From contig JAWQFM010000022.1 of the NCBI GenBank assembly GCA_033442325.1, positions 861,892 to 925,891 on the forward strand: a DNA stretch of 64,000 bases, given 5' to 3'. This document shows positions 44,900-52,381 of the stretch, piece by piece. The notes beneath the pieces are model-generated. The model worked only from the letters and a program-made list of their open reading frames with translations, was not told the DNA's origin and did not search any database. This DNA comes from Salpingoeca rosetta. Taxonomy: Eukaryota > Protista > Choanoflagellata. Both the position numbers and the translations under genes were made by a program. The number at the start of each line of letters is the position of its first letter. Position 1 is the first letter of the stretch.

Positions 44900-45263
44900 A
44901 TGATTAGCATCGCTGCGCTGAACCAGCACGTCGACGATGAGGAGAAGGTCCACACGTGCTGGCAGTTCCCTACAAAGATCCTGTGCCTCTTTTTGGTTGG
45001 CTGGTCCTACCTTCTCATTGGAGGAGCTGTCTTTTCCCACCTGGAAAAGGGCGAGGAGCTCTCCGCAGAGCGTCAGGTACGGTGCCATGCATTCGCATGC
45101 GTATGCGTGCGTGTAGTTGTTAGGTTGTTGTCCTCGCTGCTGCTGGTAGTGGTGGTGGTGGTGCTGCTGCTGTGTGTGGCTGCTGGTGGTGCTGTTTTGT
45201 GTGTGTGTGTGTGTGCGTGTGCGTGTGTGTGTGTGTGCGTGTGTGTGGTTGCTGGTGGTGCTG

Positions 45264-45304
<41 letters not shown>

Positions 45305-45319
45305 CGCGTGCGTGTGTGC

Positions 45320-45350
<31 letters not shown>

Positions 45351-45780
45351 CGTGTGCTTGTGTTACAGGTGTGTGTGTGTGTGTTTTGCGTGGAGCAGCG
45401 GGTAACCAGCGCATGGGTGGGCAAGCTCACAGTCTCCCCCCCCCCCCGCTTCCCACGTACACGCACACAGTATTTGGGCGCCATTGACAATGCCATCGCA
45501 GATGGCAACTTCACAACCAACCAAACGCAAGTCCTCATGAACCTGTTGGACACCTTGGACGAACTCCGATCAACCGCCGTCAACATCGGCAAAACAGACT
45601 GGTCATTCGTCGGCGCCACATATTTTGCCACCACAGCCGTCACCACCATCGGTGCGCGCGCATTTCTGCTTGTGCACGATGATGATGATGATTTGGACGC
45701 GGAGGATGCAAAAGATGAGCAGGATGAGCAGAAAGGGGGTGGACGAGGAGGGTGAAGAGAGCAAGGAGGGTGAGGAAGAC

Positions 45781-45811
<31 letters not shown>

Positions 45812-46548
45812 TGCAGTACATTGCCGGTCCATGTACTGTCATGGCTCTTCGCGCAACCCGCTGCTGCTGCTGATGCCACATGTGTTGTTCACTCACGACT
45901 TTCTCTTGCACGGCTGCGGCTGATTTTGCGGGTGCTTGTGGTTGTGCTCATGGCTCTATGGCCGGACAGGTTACGGCTGGATTGCACCCAAGACAGTGGG
46001 CGGGCGCGTGTTCTGCATCCTGTATTCCGTCATTGGGATCCCCCTCGTCTTTTACATGTTCGCATACCTGGGGCGCAAGATGATGGACATTATCGGCTTC
46101 AGAATATCAAGGTTGGCGCGTTGTGTGTGCGTGTGTGTGTCTGTGTCTGTGTGTGTGTCTGTGTGTGCGTCTATATATGTGTGCGTGAACGACTATGTGT
46201 GTGTGTGTGTAAACGGGTGTGTGTATGAACTGCTTCACGTTCCTCCTCTGTCCCGCTGCATCTCATCACCCCTCATCTCTTTCTCATCTCCTTCCCTTTC
46301 CCTTTACACGGTTATCACACCACCGCCCCTGTAGCTTACGAGAAGGGAGCGAGTACAAACGCAAGCAGCTGCAGAGCGACTCTGTGGTGCTGCCCATGTT
46401 TGTTGCGCTCTTCATCGCCGCGCTACTCATATCCGTATTTGCCATCGCATTCACTTACACGTAAGCATCGTTGAAGCTGTGTGCGTGTGTTTGTGTGTGC
46501 GTTGTGTGTGTGTTGTGTGTGCGTGTGCATGTGTTTGTGTGTGCGCTG

Positions 46549-46584
<36 letters not shown>

Positions 46585-47210
46585 CTGTGATGGTGACTGC
46601 ACCTATGTTATGCGCGTTGAGATGAGTTTGGGATTGTTTCGACCGGGTTGAGCTCGCGTGCTCTCGTTCTCCGTCTCACGCGTTGCCATCACTTGTGTTT
46701 CGTCTCAAACAAACTTACAGGGAAACATGGACATACTTTGAGTCGTTTTACTTTGTCTTCATTACCATGACTACCATTGGTTTTGGCGATTTCGTGCCGG
46801 TGAGTGCGTCATATGTGTGCGTGCGCGCGTGAATGCGTCCGTGTGCCTGTGCCTGTGTTTGTGTCTGTGTTTGTGTTTGTGTTTGTGTTTGTGTCTGCGC
46901 CTGTGCCTGTGCCTGTGTCTGTGTCTGTGTCTATGACCACAGGTTGCACAGTCTACTTGCCACCGCCGACAGTAATGCGAACCCCCACACCCGCCACCCA
47001 CACCCGCACCTCTTCCCGTTGAACCAGACATACCGCGACCACCCCGTACCGCTGATCCTGCAAGTCTTTGGCATCTTCCTGGCCCTTTCCGTCTACTCCT
47101 ACCTCATCAACGTCGCCATTGTTCTCGTCACAAGGTGTGTTGTGTGGGTACGTTGTGTGTGTTGTTGTGTGGGTACGTTGTCTTGTGTGTGTGTGTATGT
47201 GTGTGTATGT

Positions 47211-47272
<62 letters not shown>

Positions 47273-47853
47273 TTATGTTGTTTCATGCGCGTGGGGGTGA
47301 ACCTGCATGTTGCGTCGAGGTGCCTGCAAGCAGTGCGTGTGTGACGTCGGTGTGTGCCATTGACTGAGTTGCCCACGCTTACCTTGCTCCTGCACGCACA
47401 CCAGGTTGGTGCACAACGTCACTCGCAAGAGCCTCTCCCGGATGGATATTCGCGGAACGGGTCACATTGGCCCAGCAGAGGTGCGTCTCGCTGGATTTGT
47501 CTGTTGCTATTGCTGCCGCTGCCATTCATGGTCGTCTCTTTCGTCCTCTCACGTGGCCCATTGCACTGCACTCACAAACAACGCTACTCTGTCTCCCGTT
47601 GCATGCTATCGCTCCGCTGCAAACCTGTTTTTTTTTTCTCTCTCTGGCTTGCGGTTTTAGTTTGTTTACTGCCTGCTCGGGCGCACACAAGATCGCCGGC
47701 TGCGCTACCAGGCGCAACTGCTCGACGCTGTGCTGCAGAAGGACCTGGATTACACTGCACGGGCTGCCATTCTCCAGGAATGGGGCCAGGCCGTCGCCTT
47801 GGGCTTCAAGCACCTCCAGCTTCCACGTGGCCTCAAGCTCTACATCGTGCTCG

Positions 47854-47922
<69 letters not shown>

Positions 47923-50423
47923 CGTGTGCGGTCTGTGTGTGTTCACATATGTGCATGTCTGTGTTTGTGTTTGTCTGTGTGTGTCTGTGTGCATGTCCTG
48001 TCGTTGATATACGGAGTACGTGAATGCTGTGACCAAGACATGGCTCTCAACATCAATACCATCACACCCGCCCTCATCACTAGGCGGTCCCGCGTCGGGC
48101 AAGACGCTCATGTGCAAGAAGCTCGCCTCGAAATACGGCCTCGAACGCATCGACGTACGTATTTTCACACCAGTTGCTTGAGAACTCTGTGTGCATCTTT
48201 GTGACGTTGCTCCCAACTTGCTGCGCTCTCACGTTGCTTCAAATTACCCTCTCTGCGTCACAATTACACGCCTGCATGCTCCCACACCACACGCACACAC
48301 GCACACACGCAGGTTGAGCGGCTGATTCTACTTGAGGTGCTGTCGGAGACGGGTCGGGGGCGGGCCATTGAATCGCTCATCAACCACGGCTGCGTCCTGC
48401 CGAAACAGGTCATCTTGGACCTCATCATCTCTCGACTCAAAAAGGTCGATTGTGTGTGTGTGTGTGTGTGCGTGTGCGTGTGCGTGTTTCGATCTGCTGT
48501 GTCTGTACCTCCTTGCGTTCGTTTGCGTTGCCTGCAAGCAGCTTTTGTGCACACACCTCGCCGCCACCTCTGCTGTCCTCACGCTTCCTCTCATTTCGGT
48601 CCTGCCTTGCGTTGTTTGTGCTGCATCGGTGCAGCTGCCACCCAACTGCTCTTGTATTTTGGACGGCTTTCCACTGGACGTGCACCAAGCCCGTTTCCTC
48701 GAGCAAGAAGTGTGTAGACCACTTTGCAGTGAACAATGTGATGTTTCGTGCTTGCATGCACACACACACACACACACTCTCTCTCTCTCTCTTATCATTT
48801 CTACGTTGTCTCTATGTTTGGTGTTCCAAAGCACACGCTCGCATACACACAGAGAGAATACTCAACAACATGCACTCACTCACTCACTCACTCTAACTCA
48901 CTCGATCACTCACTCACTCACTCACGCAACCCCACACATCACGCGCACCGCGGCGGCAGTGCAAGTATGCGGAGCGCGTGTTTCTACTGCAGTGCAGCGA
49001 CGAATTGCTTGAGGAGCGGCTGTTCCAGATGGACAGGTCGGTAGTGTTTGGCATTCGCGCCCTGCTAGGCCCGCGCCTGCAGTCGCAGCCTTCGTCCCCG
49101 CACGCAACAACAGAGCAGCCGCGTGCGCGGGGTGTTGGCGGTGGACACGGGCAGTCGCACTTGCAAGGACGCGAGTCGCTTCTCTCCGCAGAATCGCCAT
49201 CAGCGTCGCTTGAAGACAACAATGACGCGGACAACGGCAACGGGAGGAGGAAGAGGAGCAGCAGGGACAAGGCGGTTGGCACTGGTGTTGGGAGGTGGGC
49301 ACAGCGCATGGAGGCAACGGGTGTTGATGTGGCGCATGAGCGGTCCACTTCCATGCTGATTAATGGCCAACCAGAGTCGATCCGAGAGGAGGATGAAGGT
49401 GGCGGTGATGGTGGTGACGCAACAGCAGAAACAATAACGACAGCTGCTTCTGGTGGTGAGCATGATGGACACCAGCCCTCGAAATCACGCGTACGATCCA
49501 CACACGCAGCGCCGCCCACCATTGCAGAAACAGCGATTGGCAGCAACAGCGCACGAGGCAGCCATGGCGCCAGCCGCGTGGTGGTAAAGAAGAACGGGCA
49601 CAGCAGCGACGGCAGACCACCAATGCTGCCGTACACAGCGCCAGCAACAGCGACTACAAGGACCAGCCCACCCACAACGACAACTACCGCCGGCACAAGT
49701 GTCAATGACGAGTCGCCCGCCACGCTGTCAACTGCAGAGTCCATCAACACTCGCAGCCAACACGGCAGCAACACTGGCGGTGGTCACAAGGGTCACGGAC
49801 GGTCAGAGCGGGGCAGCAGCGGCGATGGGAAGCGGGGGTTCCTGCAGCGACAACCGAAGCACAGCGTGTCGATTGAGATTGAGGACTTGGAAGGACGCGT
49901 GCACGAGGAGCCGCATGGCAGCAGCGGTGTTGGCCACGGCGGCCACGGTGTTAGCGGGGTGCAGACAGAGGCGTTGGAGCAAGTGGTGGAGAGCAGGAGC
50001 ACGCAGGAACAGGACGGTGTTGGGAGCAGTGTCAGCCGCATCTCAAGCTCGTCACAGCTGCGACCCAACGTGTCTGCGCTAGTGAAGAGTCGCAGCATGG
50101 ACACGGACAACCGACCGCGTCGCACGCGCCTGCGCCGCTCATCTGAGGACAGCAGCGGGCGGCGGGAGCTTAGCCACGTGGCGTCGCGCAACTCGCTGTT
50201 CTTCCAAGGGCTCCTGCGTGAAATCAAGGCATCCACCCCGACAGCGACGAAGAAGAAGTGGCGAAAGGCAAAGTCGCCCTCACGCCGGCACTCGCTCTCC
50301 CCGGAGGACATGCCGCACGCCAGCGTCTCCTCGCAGCCGCCAGAAGTGCTGGATGAGGTACGGACATGGCATGATGATGGTGGTGTGCGTTGCATTGTTG
50401 TTGTTGAAGTTGTTGTTGTTTAA

Positions 50424-50455
<32 letters not shown>

Positions 50456-50538
50456 AGTTGTTGTTGTTGTTTAAGTTGTTGTTTAGGTTGTTGTTTAAGT
50501 TGTTGTTTAGGTTGTTGTTGTTTAAGTTGTTGTTTAAG

Positions 50539-50575
<37 letters not shown>

Positions 50576-50577
50576 AG

Positions 50578-50634
<57 letters not shown>

Positions 50635-50983
50635 TGCGCATTACGAGGTCACTGCCGCCGTCCACTTTGCTGCTGCCTTCTCACGCGTGCGCGCTATTCT
50701 TCCTGCCTTGAAACACAACTGCAGTTCAATGACGACCTGCTGCGAAGATGGCAGGAGAACAAGGTTGCATTGCGTGATTATTTCCAATCGCATTTGCACG
50801 AGGTACGCCCGCTGGTTGGCCTTGCCTGCAAGCAAGCAAGCTTGGTTTACGCCGATTAGCTCCCGGCTCGTTGGCTTGCACGCTGTTTGCTTCGCGCATG
50901 CAGTATGACTGTCTACATGAACTGCAGTGAAGACAAGCCCTTGCTTGAATTGAGTTGGACATTGGCGTACTCACCTCGTTCTC

Positions 50984-51058
<75 letters not shown>

Positions 51059-51633
51059 AGATTGACGCGGAGCAGTCGATTGACGACACGTTTGAGAGCT
51101 TGTGCCGGGCGTTTGAATCGTCACAGGACTCGTCCTTCCTTGAAGACTTCTCCACGCTTTCGGGCAACTTCCCCATGCCAGGCGCCACGTACCCAGAGCA
51201 GCCGAGCGGCAGGCGCGCATCAAAGGCGGCACTGAAGCGGGGTCAGCACCACCGCCGTGACAAGAACACGAGTGCAAGCGGGAGTCGTGTTGGTCGCGGT
51301 GATGCCTCCAACCCAACCGCTGCAACAAACGCAAGCGCCACAACACATGCTGTTGGAGACGGCTCCAAGCCCTCATCAGCGGCAGGCGCACGGCGCAGGG
51401 GCGGTCACCGCGACGACGGTGGTGGTGGTGGCGGTGATCGTGGTGATGGCGATGCAAGGGAAAGTGCGGTTGCAACCTCGGCAGCGGCGACTGGAACTGC
51501 TGGAGGTGAGCTGATCGGACCACAGACAAGCCGTCCGTCATCGCACGCGAGCCACCGCCAGTTATCGCGCTCAACCTCGCTTCCGTCGCACCCGTCATCC
51601 CCAGACACACAGGCCGAGATTATCGTCTTGTAG
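44900..51633 (+). CDS. Two-pore-domain (K2P/KCNK-like) potassium channel fused to a C-terminal adenylate/NMP-kinase-like domain; ~14 exons (44900-45076, 45471-45651, 45970-46111, 46335-46460, 46721-46799, 47028-47134, 47405-47480, 47712-47853, 48084-48154, 48313-48444, 48635-48709, 48960-50357, 50725-50802, 51061-51633)
   Basis: K2P part: M1 [14 protein letters not shown]1 [27 protein letters not shown]2 [16 protein letters not shown]2 [24 protein letters not shown], then M4. In-phase exons continue into [49 protein letters not shown] and [16 protein letters not shown], an adenylate kinase fold. Confidence 0.85.
50394..50634. repeat. (GTT)n microsatellite with periodic TTTAAG/TTTAGG interruptions, intronic in the K2P gene
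   Basis: Direct observation; lies inside intron 50358-50724. Confidence 0.95.
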
Positions 51634-51656
51634 CACGCCTGCGCGTAAGTGAGTTT

Positions 51657-51732
<76 letters not shown>

Positions 51733-52381
51733 AGGTGCACGTCACGGGGTCACCACTGCTGAACTTGCGCTCACCCTCGATGTGTGTGTGTGTGTGTGTT
51801 GATGACCTATTGACTTGCGTGTCCCTGTGATGCGTACGTTTGGTTGGTGCCATTGCATTGTCCACAGGCCTCAGTCTCGCTTGCCTGTTTGCAGTGCACG
51901 AGTGTTGTTGTGTGTTCTTGGTGATTGAGTTTGTCCTCATCTTCGTCATTGTCTTCACTTTCCTCCCTTCCGCCGCAAGTGAGTTCTTTTGCTCACAACC
52001 ACTCGCTTCTTCCTGTCGATACCTGCCTGTCCTTGTACAGTTGTACATATCTAGCCCCTGATAGAACCATGTTCTGCTGACTGTTGATGTGCTGTGTCAC
52101 TGTATCATTCATTCACCTACCCCCGTTGTCAAGTAGTTGTTGCTGTTCCATGTGAGAGACCATGCACTCTACTCTGTTGACCGTCTCGCTCGCCCTTCGG
52201 GACCATAAACTGTCAACCCAAACACGACGTTCTCGTTGCTGTTCCTGCTTGCTTATCTTGTTTGGAGATAGGGATTGGGTGTGCTTGCATGCAAGCGTGT
52301 AGTGCAGTGCGCTCTCTGCTCTGTCGCACATACAAAGCCACTATCACATGTGATACACAATTGGCAGGGAGCTGTGAAGTA

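What the first reader, a model, noticed from the sequence alone, without database searches (positions are those of the whole stretch)
44900..51633. K2P potassium channel fused to an adenylate-kinase-fold domain: candidate nucleotide/energy-gated K+ channel
Seen in sequence: a complete 4TM/2P channel (filters TIGYG and TIGFG) continues through in-phase GT-AG exons, with no stop, into an NMP-kinase fold. The fold shows the P-loop [10 protein letters not shown] (47845-48105), an NMP-binding-like segment ([23 protein letters not shown]), [21 protein letters not shown] and the terminal strand/helix [15 protein letters not shown]. Established: animal K2P (KCNK) channels have no nucleotide-kinase domain, and metabolic gating of K+ channels in animals is done by Kir6/SUR (K-ATP), to which adenylate kinase couples in trans. 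Inference: this may be an independently evolved, single-polypeptide adenine-nucleotide-sensing K+ channel. I do not recall this architecture being described.
Basis: partly seen in the sequence, partly recalled or inferred. Interest (0 to 1): 0.85.

Follow-up and report, generated by a model that had tools for sequence, protein, structure and literature searches.

The report
K2P potassium channel fused to pseudo-adenylate-kinase
A choanoflagellate gene really does encode, in one transcript and one protein, a two-pore-domain potassium leak channel joined to an adenylate-kinase-like domain. That domain has lost key catalytic residues, so it is probably a built-in nucleotide sensor or regulator, an arrangement no paper we could search describes.

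Summary
Window 44900-51633 (+) holds a 14-exon gene. Its RNA-corrected translation is letter-for-letter Salpingoeca rosetta PTSG_08078 (XP_004991099.1, UniProt F2UHX8; 1135 aa), so far named only "hypothetical / potassium channel domain-containing protein".

- **Domains:** Pfam gives Ion_trans_2 twice (93.5 bits) and ADK (66.6 bits, cut-off 26.8).
- **Closest solved structures:** TASK-1/KCNK3 for the channel (E 6e-38) and AK5/AK1 for the kinase part (E 4e-17).
- **One transcript:** a single spliced 3847-nt contig spans the channel exons, the kinase exons and the stop codon.
- **Conservation:** complete transcriptome ORFs with the same architecture exist in Microstomoeca roanoka, Choanoeca perplexa and C. 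flexa. No animal K2P found carries ADK.

The kinase domain looks like a pseudo-enzyme:
- The P-loop, the DGFP Asp and the C-terminal IDAE loop are invariant.
- AK1 R44 is Leu in all four species, and R97 is L/V/S/S.
- The LID is replaced by a 177-437-aa disordered insert.

The domain boundary lies inside exon 8. Nucleotide gating is plausible but untested. The scan noted the same stretch once more (s1-443411), not on other DNA. I rate it a new variant of a known kind, interest about 0.66.

The parts
44900..51633 (+). Whole coding region of PTSG_08078, 14 exons, 1135 aa. Exons: 44900-45076, 45471-45651, 45970-46111, 46335-46460, 46721-46799, 47028-47134, 47405-47480, 47661-47853, 48084-48154, 48313-48444, 48635-48709, 48960-50357, 50725-50802, 51061-51633.
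   Evidence: Splice-site check and translation. Spliced contigs. Translation identical to P0003.
44978..47129 (+). K2P channel core, aa 27-269: M1 (44978-45034), cap region, P1 with TIGYG (45645-45977 across intron 2), M2 (46008-46064), M3 (46396-46452), P2 with TIGFG (46773-46787), M4 (47073-47129).
   Evidence: Hydropathy shows 4 TM segments. Ion_trans_2 93.5 bits in 2 stretches. TASK-1 134 bits, E 6e-38. AF2 model pLDDT 74.7; the Foldseek top 50 are all K2P channels.
47132..47825 (+). Conserved helical linker, aa 271-351 (end of exon 6, exon 7, most of exon 8). It joins M4 to the first strand of the kinase fold. No Pfam family matches it.
   Evidence: 31-57% identity to orthologs with many invariant residues. 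Model helices at 294-301, 305-320 and 327-343. Pfam blank.
47661..47853 (+). Exon 8, with the corrected acceptor. One exon encodes the linker, strand beta1 (LKLYIVL) and the first base of the codon of the first P-loop Gly (G361), so the domain boundary lies inside an exon.
   Evidence: Joint 47480 to 47661 in runs X4 and X7. The 17 extra residues are conserved.
47826..49040 (+). Adenylate-kinase-like domain, N-terminal three quarters, aa 352-480 (exons 8-12). P-loop GGPASGKT at 47853 + 48084-48106, NMP-bind-like helices, DGFPL, and the strand/helix up to ...ERLFQMDRS.
   Evidence: PF00406 ADK 66.6 bits, E 3.5e-18, residues 359-478 = profile 1-123/151. AK5 2bwj 65.8 bits. Foldseek top 50 all adenylate kinases. 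Per-exon hits.
49041..50351 (+). 437-aa low-complexity, predicted-disordered insert at the LID position, aa 481-917, all inside exon 12. It is rich in S/G/R/T and has basophilic-kinase-type sites RKRSS (550) and RRSS (845). A conserved basic/amphipathic motif lies near its end (about aa 866-900), including the RRHS site at 895.
   Evidence: pLDDT about 30 except helix 866-878. Composition and motifs. Length varies 177-437 aa among orthologs with about 10% identity. The exon is retained whole in RNA contigs.
50352..51120 (+). Adenylate-kinase-like domain, C-terminal part, aa 918-965 (end of exon 12, exon 13, start of exon 14): FNDDLL..., IDAE loop, final helix.
   Evidence: Ortholog profile against PDB: 12 of 13 hits are adenylate kinases, each at its C-terminus, best E 0.0058. 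I946, D947, A948 and E949 are invariant. Pfam on this piece alone is blank.
51121..51633 (+). Low-complexity C-terminal tail, aa 966-1135, and TAG stop. Contains an RRAS site at aa 996.
   Evidence: Composition. No Pfam hit. Poorly conserved.

Best explanation
Shown: this is one gene, one mRNA and one 1135-aa protein. Its N-terminal 270 residues are a KCNK-type two-pore-domain K+ channel. It has four TM helices, an extracellular cap and two canonical K+ filters. M4 runs through a conserved about 80-residue helical linker straight into an AK1/AK5-type adenylate-kinase fold. That fold is split at its LID by a long disordered insert. The architecture is conserved in at least four choanoflagellate species. 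The kinase-like domain keeps the Walker-A P-loop, the DGFP aspartate, the equivalent of AK1 R128 (R/H/R/R) and the C-terminal IDAE loop. It has lost the AMP-site arginines (AK1 R44 is Leu in all four species; R97 is L/V/S/S) and the arginine-bearing LID. Canonical adenylate kinases with all these residues exist elsewhere in the same genome. Inferred: the domain is a pseudo-kinase that no longer transfers phosphate but still binds ATP/ADP at the donor site. By homology with K2P channels, the protein should form a dimer, which would carry two such domains. Nucleotide occupancy would move the linker and M4, the lever that controls the filter gate in TREK/TASK-type K2Ps. K+ leak, and hence membrane potential, would then follow the adenine-nucleotide state. 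The disordered insert, with its RRxS-type sites and conserved basic motif, would add phosphorylation or partner control. The sign of the effect (ATP opens or closes) is unknown. The confidence given is for the inferred sensor mechanism; the shown part (real, conserved single-protein fusion with a degenerate AK fold) I hold at about 0.97.
For: Single transcript: run X4 holds one 3847-nt spliced contig (depth 282) from exon 2 to the 3'UTR. Its record arithmetic fits every exon. Run X7, from another study, confirms exons 6-7-8, 10-11-12 and 12-13-14. Model = P0003 = PTSG_08078. Domains: Ion_trans_2 93.5 bits and ADK 66.6 bits. PDB: TASK-1 E 6e-38, AK5 E 3.8e-17. Models and Foldseek. The C-terminal AK segment was recovered by profile. 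Orthologs with both domains as complete ORFs: M. roanoka, C. perplexa, C. flexa. A TARA metagenome relative shares the kinase exons. Regional identity of S. rosetta to Choanoeca: channel 61%, AK N part 40%, insert about 10%. This shows purifying selection on the kinase fold. Residue pattern. The same-genome canonical AK keeps GKGT, TGDLFR and DGFPR. Single copy in the genome.
Against: No nucleotide-binding or electrophysiological data exist. The ATP-site argument rests on a few conserved motifs. R473 is His in M. roanoka. The P-loop is GK[TS] rather than the AK-typical GKGT. The kinase model is confident only for residues 349-440. How the post-insert segment packs is not modelled with confidence. 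Domain-domain geometry is unknown. The raw-read RNA run had only 6 reads on the stretch, so expression may be low in some conditions. The runs that give the spliced contigs are labelled 'RNA?' (a guess); their RNA origin is inferred from the removal of all 13 introns.
Confidence: 0.48

Rival explanations
1. The AK-like domain is a nucleotide-independent module for scaffolding, trafficking or assembly. One option is anchoring the channel near axonemal or other AK-binding machinery. Another is simply to carry the long phosphorylatable disordered insert that does the regulating. On this reading the P-loop is kept only for fold stability.
For: The catalytic arginines are lost and the LID is replaced. 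The insert has several RRxS-type sites and a conserved basic motif. Degenerate AK domains occur naturally in structural ciliary proteins: AK9 domain 3 has DGYPV (alignment).
Against: G361, G362, P363, G366 and K367, D438 and the IDAE loop are invariant across lineages that share only about 40% identity in this domain. That is more than fold maintenance usually needs. No localisation signal or partner is known.
Confidence: 0.3
2. This is a true chanzyme. The domain is still an active nucleoside-monophosphate kinase with atypical residues, with arginines supplied from the insert or from the second subunit of the dimer. It would produce or consume ADP next to the pore.
For: The ADK Pfam score is well above the cut-off. 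P-loop Lys and Asp are retained. AK5 domain 2 also lacks arginines at the exact AK1 R132/R138 positions (my reading of the alignment plus the remembered AK1 sequence). The insert is Arg-rich (10% R).
Against: AK1 R44 and R97, the AMP-phosphate ligands, are hydrophobic or small in all four orthologs. The LID region is not conserved in sequence or length. The genome has canonical AKs for the housekeeping reaction.
Confidence: 0.1
3. This is a gene-model or assembly artefact: two neighbouring genes, a K2P and an AK-like gene, joined by read-through or mis-annotation.
For: The six-frame PF00406 genome search did not ring at this locus. The contig-based runs are only guessed to be RNA.
Against: Splices link every exon from the channel to the kinase in contigs of two studies. 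Exon 8 itself encodes linker, beta1 and the first base of the first P-loop codon. No stop occurs before 51631. De novo transcriptomes of three other species give complete single ORFs with both domains. The miss is explained by 23-44-aa exons, whose per-exon hits are collinear.
Confidence: 0.02

Closest known systems
Animal K2P / KCNK channels (closest solved: TASK-1 KCNK3, TASK-3 KCNK9, TREK-2, TREK-1, THIK-1)
   Same: Four TM helices and two pore domains per chain. TIGYG and TIGFG filters. Helical extracellular cap between M1 and P1, with no cap cysteine (as I recall for TASK-1/3). A long M4 continues into the cytosol. 134 bits, E 6e-38 to TASK-1; Foldseek top 50 all K2P.
   Different: The cytosolic C-terminus is an about 860-residue extension holding an adenylate-kinase fold. 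No animal K2P in the 458-1456 aa range searched carried PF00406.
Short-type cytosolic adenylate kinases AK1 / AK5 (PF00406)
   Same: Fold, order of secondary-structure elements, P-loop, DGFP motif, C-terminal strand and helix. ADK 66.6 bits; AK5 65.8 bits.
   Different: AK1 R44 is Leu and R97 is L/V/S/S. The P-loop is GK[TS], not GKGT. The LID is replaced by a 177-437-aa disordered insert. The domain is tethered to a channel. It is likely catalytically dead.
TRPM2 channel-enzyme (NUDT9-H domain), including the S. rosetta TRPM2 chanzyme (PMC6461439; bioRxiv 10.1101/2023.03.16.533055)
   Same: A nucleotide-metabolising enzyme fold fused to the C-terminus of a cation channel. In vertebrate TRPM2 the enzyme domain has lost catalysis and serves as a ligand-binding module, according to the abstracts seen. 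A choanoflagellate carries the ancestral form.
   Different: A different channel superfamily branch (6TM tetramer against 4TM/2P dimer), a different enzyme fold (Nudix against P-loop NMP kinase), and a different ligand (ADP-ribose).
K-ATP channels (Kir6.x + SUR), with adenylate kinase coupling in trans
   Same: The concept: K+ conductance set by adenine nucleotides, with adenylate-kinase phosphotransfer feeding the sensor (established knowledge, not tested here).
   Different: Kir 2TM/1P tetramer plus an ABC-protein partner. ATP binds the Kir6 cytoplasmic domain and the SUR NBDs. There is no AK fold in the channel polypeptide. No IRK domain is present here.
Prokaryotic K+ channels and transporters with RCK/KTN domains (MthK, KtrA/TrkA)
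   Same: A soluble nucleotide-binding fold attached below a K+ pore acts as the gating ring or ligand sensor (established knowledge).
   Different: Rossmann-type RCK fold, tetrameric or octameric ring, unrelated to NMP kinases.

Membership tests
K2P / KCNK two-pore-domain K+ channels | Two pore (Ion_trans_2) domains in one polypeptide | tested here: met
   PF07885 93.5 bits in 2 stretches on P0003. Per-exon hits on exons 2, 3 and 5.
K2P / KCNK two-pore-domain K+ channels | Four transmembrane helices arranged M1-P1-M2-M3-P2-M4 | tested here: met
   Hydropathy peaks at 27-45, 133-151, 188-206 and 251-269. Helices in the AF2 model.
K2P / KCNK two-pore-domain K+ channels | K+ selectivity-filter signature T-x-G-Y/F-G in both P loops | tested here: met
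   T118-I-G-Y-G122 and T227-I-G-F-G231. Invariant or near-invariant in orthologs and in 20 K2P rows.
K2P / KCNK two-pore-domain K+ channels | Extracellular helical cap between M1 and P1 | tested here: met
   Model helices 19-70 and 75-91. About 58 residues, with NFT and NQT sequons. Full-length alignment to TASK/TREK chains.
K2P / KCNK two-pore-domain K+ channels | Closer to KCNK than to other two-pore K+ channels (TOK) | tested here: met
   KCNK3 134 bits against TOK1 46 bits.
K2P / KCNK two-pore-domain K+ channels | Dimeric assembly and K+-selective leak current | not testable with these tools
   Needs expression and recording. No complex job was run.
Adenylate kinase family (Pfam ADK PF00406) | Profile score above the curated threshold | tested here: met
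   66.6 bits against 26.8, E 3.5e-18, profile 1-123/151. Orthologs score 57.8-61.9 bits.
Adenylate kinase family (Pfam ADK PF00406) | Glycine-rich P-loop with catalytic Lys (AK1 K21) | tested here: met
   G361, G362, P363, G366 and K367 are invariant. The variant is GK[TS] instead of GKGT.
Adenylate kinase family (Pfam ADK PF00406) | AMP-site arginines (AK1 R44 in xGDLLR, R97 in DGYPR) | tested here: not met
   L390 in all four species. L442 / V / S / S. The canonical AK of the same genome keeps both.
Adenylate kinase family (Pfam ADK PF00406) | LID segment with catalytic arginines (AK1 R132, R138, R149) | tested here: not met
   The LID position is occupied by a 437-aa disordered insert (177-230 aa in orthologs) with no conserved Arg pattern.
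Adenylate kinase family (Pfam ADK PF00406) | C-terminal strand and helix completing the CORE | tested here: met
   Profile A7 against PDB: 12 of 13 hits are AKs, each at its C-terminus, best E 0.0058. This is weak but specific. Pfam alone is blank.
Adenylate kinase family (Pfam ADK PF00406) | ATP:AMP phosphotransferase activity | not testable with these tools
   Needs an enzyme assay. The sequence predicts loss.
K-ATP (Kir6/SUR) | Inward-rectifier 2TM/1P subunit (Pfam IRK) | tested here: not met
   No IRK hit on P0003. The pore is Ion_trans_2 twice.
Channel-enzymes ('chanzymes', functional class) | An enzyme-fold domain covalently part of the channel subunit | tested here: met
   Single ORF and single transcript.
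Channel-enzymes ('chanzymes', functional class) | Catalytic activity of that domain | tested here: inconclusive
   Key residues are lost. Activity was not measured.

The most novel reading that the evidence does not exclude
Choanoflagellates may possess a self-contained 'K-ATP-like' leak channel. In it, a K2P pore would be gated directly by ATP/ADP binding to a covalently attached, catalytically dead adenylate-kinase fold. This would be an independent invention of metabolic control of membrane potential in the closest living relatives of animals. It would also be the first K2P with an enzyme-derived ligand-binding domain.
Probability: 0.3. Interest if true: 0.85.

Novelty: new variant of a known kind. 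Interest (0 to 1): 0.66.

Why it matters
K2P channels set resting potential in animal cells. They are regulated through their proximal C-terminus by lipids, stretch, pH and phosphorylation. None is known to carry a nucleotide-binding enzyme fold. Here that lever (M4 plus linker) is wired directly to an adenylate-kinase-derived domain, and the arrangement has been conserved across choanoflagellate lineages. If the domain binds ATP/ADP, this is a compact single-gene link between energy state and K+ conductance. It would be easy to test in oocytes or HEK cells and by genome editing in S. rosetta. It would also give a second example, after TRPM2/NUDT9-H, of an enzyme turned into a channel ligand sensor in the sister group of animals. 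Even if the domain is only a scaffold, it adds an unanalysed branch to K2P evolution. The one survey that saw choanoflagellate K2Ps explicitly left them unanalysed (PMC11287247).

Tried and rejected
- **Six-frame PF00406 search of the genome.** No hit at this locus. The kinase exons are only 23-44 aa long. The spliced-protein scan and the collinear per-exon hits supersede it.
- **phmmer of exon 12 against 1.84 billion representatives.** It did not return the window's own protein. It did give the M. roanoka ortholog and a TARA fragment, which led to P0003.
- **Word-based search with the kinase domain alone.** No protein at E<=0.001. The domain shares too few 5-mers with ordinary AKs. This is not evidence of absence.
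- **C-terminal AK segment.**
  - Pfam on it alone was blank.
  - tblastn of it against the genome's AK loci was not significant.
  - A three-row MAFFT alignment (A6) was uninformative.
  - The ortholog profile against PDB resolved the question.
- **First AF2 model (340-980).** Mean pLDDT was 42, so only residues 349-440 were used. Nothing is concluded about how the post-insert helices pack.
- **ESM Atlas.** The search by features was blank. The search by shape found K2P clusters and AK clusters separately, and none with both.
- **Raw-read RNA run X19.** Only 6 reads lay on the stretch, too few for junctions.
- **Joint 49417 to 51418 in X7 (CG..AC, side 20).** Rejected as a repeat-driven assembly artefact between GGTGAT-type repeats.
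- **Porites lutea P0010 (274 bits).** It looked like a close animal relative but is two tandem K2P units with no kinase.
- **Not attempted or not possible.**
  - Complex prediction was not used, because dimerisation is a family property and a pass would not change my odds.
  - M. brevicollis and other holozoans could not be searched without the length window.
Full report
**1. What is in the sequence**

I read 44500-52200 and built the gene model by checking every donor and acceptor. The gene has 14 exons on the + strand, from ATG 44900 to TAG 51631-51633. All introns are GT..AG and all are in phase. Most introns are full of (TG)n or (CA)n microsatellites. The genome holding the window is 55.4 Mb in 68 contigs, and the window is C22:861892-925891.

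**2. Is it one transcript?**

The look-up of sequencing runs listed runs of the same organism holding about half of the sampled words. That is the share expected for spliced RNA, because exons make up about 51% of the stretch.

Laying four runs gave the following:
- In run X4, one 3847-nt contig (depth 282) lies on exons 3 to 14.
- Its loose end before 45969 spells the end of exon 2.
- Its record coordinates leave exactly 79, 78 and 86 nt between the listed pieces. Those are the sizes needed for exon 9, exon 11 and exon 13 together with the few unlisted bases at the ends of the flanking exons.
- Joints 46460/46721, 46799/47028, 47134/47405, 47480/47661, 48709/48960 and 50357/50725 are reported with GT..AG ends.
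- Run X7, from a different study, independently shows exons 6-7-8, 10-11-12 and 12-13-14.
- The whole 1398-nt exon 12 is retained. It is not a mis-called intron.

The real acceptor gives an exon start at 47661 and adds 17 in-frame residues.

With this correction, my translation is identical to database protein P0003. P0003 is S. rosetta PTSG_08078 / XP_004991099.1 / UniProt F2UHX8, 1135 aa. It is named only 'hypothetical protein' or 'Potassium channel domain-containing protein'.

Exon 8 encodes the linker, strand beta1 and the first base of the first P-loop codon (G361). The kinase part therefore cannot be a separate gene.

Two caveats apply. The contig runs are labelled 'RNA?' by guess; removal of all 13 introns is what shows a cDNA origin. 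The one run on record as RNA raw reads had only 6 reads here.

**3. The channel**

- Pfam on P0003 gives Ion_trans_2 at 93.5 bits in two stretches.
- Hydropathy gives four TM segments: 27-45, 133-151, 188-206 and 251-269.
- The filters are TIGYG (118-122) and TIGFG (227-231).
- phmmer against PDB gives only K2P channels at the top. These are TASK-1 (134 bits, E 6e-38), then TASK-3, TREK-2, TREK-1, THIK-1, TASK-2, TRAAK and TWIK-1. Fungal TOK1 scores only 46 bits.
- An AF2 model of residues 1-485 with a 20-row alignment has mean pLDDT 74.7.
  - It shows M1 running into two cap helices (19-70, 75-91), both pore helices and a long M4 (241-284).
  - It then shows three linker helices (294-301, 305-320, 327-343) and the first strand of the kinase fold (355-360).
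- The Foldseek top 50 hits are all K2P structures.

This is a bona fide KCNK-type K2P.

**4. The kinase-like domain**

- Exon by exon, the hits are weak but collinear: AAA_17 on exon 9, ADK positions 34-70 on exon 10, and ADK positions 76-94 on exon 11.
- On the spliced protein, ADK scores 66.6 bits, E 3.5e-18, against a cut-off of 26.8. It covers residues 359-478, which is profile 1-123 of 151.
- PDB phmmer returns 97 sequences. Those listed (the best 60) are adenylate or UMP/CMP kinases. The best single domain is human AK5 at 65.8 bits, and AK1 scores about 57 bits.
- The AF2 model of 340-980 is poor overall (pLDDT 42) but good for 349-440 (66-87). Its Foldseek top 50 are all adenylate kinases.
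- After residue 480 comes a 437-residue S/G/R/T-rich stretch predicted disordered.
- The segment after it (about 918-965) is not recognised by Pfam alone. A profile of that segment from four species, searched against PDB, gives 13 hits at E<=10.
  - Twelve of the 13 are adenylate kinases.
  - Each is aligned at its extreme C-terminus. Examples are M. tuberculosis AK 142-178 of 181 (E 0.0058) and AK5 172-196 of 199 (E 0.012).

**5. Catalytic residues**

I used the HMMER alignment to AK5, a MAFFT alignment with the canonical AK of the same genome (L001) and AK1 numbering from established mutagenesis literature (my knowledge).

| AK1 feature | S. rosetta fusion protein | Four orthologs |
|---|---|---|
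| K21 (P-loop Lys) | K367 | invariant |
| D93 | D438 | invariant |
| R128 | R473 | R/H/R/R |
| R44 (AMP site) | L390 | Leu in all four |
| R97 (AMP site) | L442 | L/V/S/S |
| LID arginines | no conserved counterpart | none |
| P-loop form (GKGT) | GK[TS] | GK[TS] |

The canonical S. rosetta AK keeps GKGT, TGDLFR, DGFPR and RGQSSGRSDDN. The genome also holds several other ADK loci.

The fused domain therefore belongs to the ADK fold family by homology, but it fails the catalytic-residue tests. It is most likely a pseudo-kinase. This agrees with the other first-stage note on the same stretch (s1-443411), whose two claims I checked directly: the LID is replaced and GFPR has become GFPL.

**6. Conservation**

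The exon-12 search found a 834-aa protein with the same layout. It is a complete transcriptome ORF of Microstomoeca roanoka.

Word-based searches with that protein, and with a four-species profile, found exactly four proteins carrying both PF07885 and PF00406 in the 458-1456 aa range:

| Species | Length (aa) |
|---|---|
| S. rosetta | 1135 |
| M. roanoka | 834 |
| Choanoeca perplexa | 832 |
| C. flexa | 879 |

All other hits were ordinary K2Ps, mostly from animals, without ADK.

A TARA Oceans scaffold (two samples) carries kinase exons 10-14 of an uncultured relative, with the same exon layout.

Identity of S. rosetta to Choanoeca by region:

| Region | Identity |
|---|---|
| Channel | 61% |
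| Linker | 31% |
| AK N part | 40% |
| Insert | about 10% |
| AK C part | about 26% |
| Tail | about 14% |

The AK fold and the linker are under purifying selection, and the insert is free to vary in length (177-437 aa). An exception is a conserved basic/amphipathic motif near the insert's end. The M2-M3 loop (GFRISSLREG.E.KRKQLQ) is almost invariant. The gene is single-copy in the genome.

**7. Mechanism**

Shown: a K2P pore whose M4 is continuous, through a conserved helical linker, with a degenerate AK fold.

Inferred: the donor (ATP) site is kept and the acceptor (AMP) site is destroyed. The domain would then bind ATP/ADP without turnover. Its nucleotide-dependent conformation would be passed through the linker and M4 to the filter gate, as proximal C-terminal signals are in TREK/TASK channels (established knowledge). 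The disordered insert carries basophilic-kinase-type sites at residues 550, 845 and 895, and the tail carries one at 996. These would add a second layer of control.

I put about 0.45-0.5 on this sensor reading, 0.3 on a nucleotide-independent scaffold or regulatory-hub role, 0.1 on a still-active chanzyme, and 0.02 on an artefact.

**8. Comparison and novelty**

The closest families are KCNK channels and AK1/AK5. The closest concept is the TRPM2/NUDT9-H channel-enzyme. That channel also exists in S. rosetta, and its enzyme domain lost catalysis in vertebrates (abstracts of PMC6461439 and bioRxiv 10.1101/2023.03.16.533055). K-ATP is analogous in purpose but unrelated in parts.

Literature searches found nothing on this architecture:
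- The accession numbers returned no paper.
- 'adenylate kinase' / K2P / choanoflagellate returned nothing relevant.
- 'potassium channel' + 'adenylate kinase domain' + fusion returned nothing relevant.
- A 623-species channel census does not mention it.

The protein itself is public, and its Pfam domains are precomputed. What is new is noticing and interpreting the architecture, not the sequence.

**Verdict:** a real, conserved, undescribed variant of a known kind (a K+ channel with an attached nucleotide-binding regulatory domain, of the channel plus pseudo-enzyme type).

Noticed in passing
window 45100-45400, 46115-46230, 46470-46590, 46830-46940, 47140-47270, 47855-47990, 50380-50640, 50985-51055, 51650-51730: Almost every intron, and the 3' flank, is dominated by (TG)n or (CA)n microsatellites. 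Intron 12 holds about 250 nt of (GTT)n with interspersed TTTAAG units. Read laying skipped these as repeats.
   Followed up: no
G000 C12:667-683 kb and C12:1186-1188 kb; C2:1160287; C21:584-586 kb; C20:41769: The genome has at least five other loci with Ion_trans_2 hits, including what looks like a tandem cluster on contig 12. None was examined for attached domains. The kinase-exon search found no second copy of the fusion.
   Followed up: partly
PDB 9d2f_A / 9fqr_Xf alignments: The third AK domain of axonemal AK9 also reads DGYPV, lacking the Arg of DGYPR, and has a GKTT P-loop like the fused domain. Naturally degenerate AK domains therefore exist in ciliary structural proteins.
   Followed up: no
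P0010 (Porites lutea, 580 aa): This coral gene model consists of two complete K2P units in tandem (8TM/4P), each matching the query at about 110-120 bits. It is either a real tandem-fused channel or two genes merged by annotation.
   Followed up: partly
L019:1-3742 and L020 (TARA Oceans metagenome scaffolds): An uncultured marine relative carries kinase exons 10-14 with the same exon layout and a long Gly/Ser/Gln-rich insert. The public gene call (P0002) reads through an intron at its 5' end.
   Followed up: partly
window 49417 / 51418: Run X7 shows a 'joint' skipping 2000 nt with CG..AC ends and only 20 nt on one side. High local depth occurs at 49300-49499 and 51300-51499. GGTGAT-type coding repeats shared with other transcripts cause chimeric contigs here.
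   Followed up: yes
window 46101-46400 (aa 162-181): The cytosolic M2-M3 loop (GFRISSLREG.E.KRKQLQ) is nearly invariant across all four species, more conserved than the TM helices. It is a candidate docking surface for the linker or AK-like domain, or a phosphorylation site (R-I-S-S).
   Followed up: no
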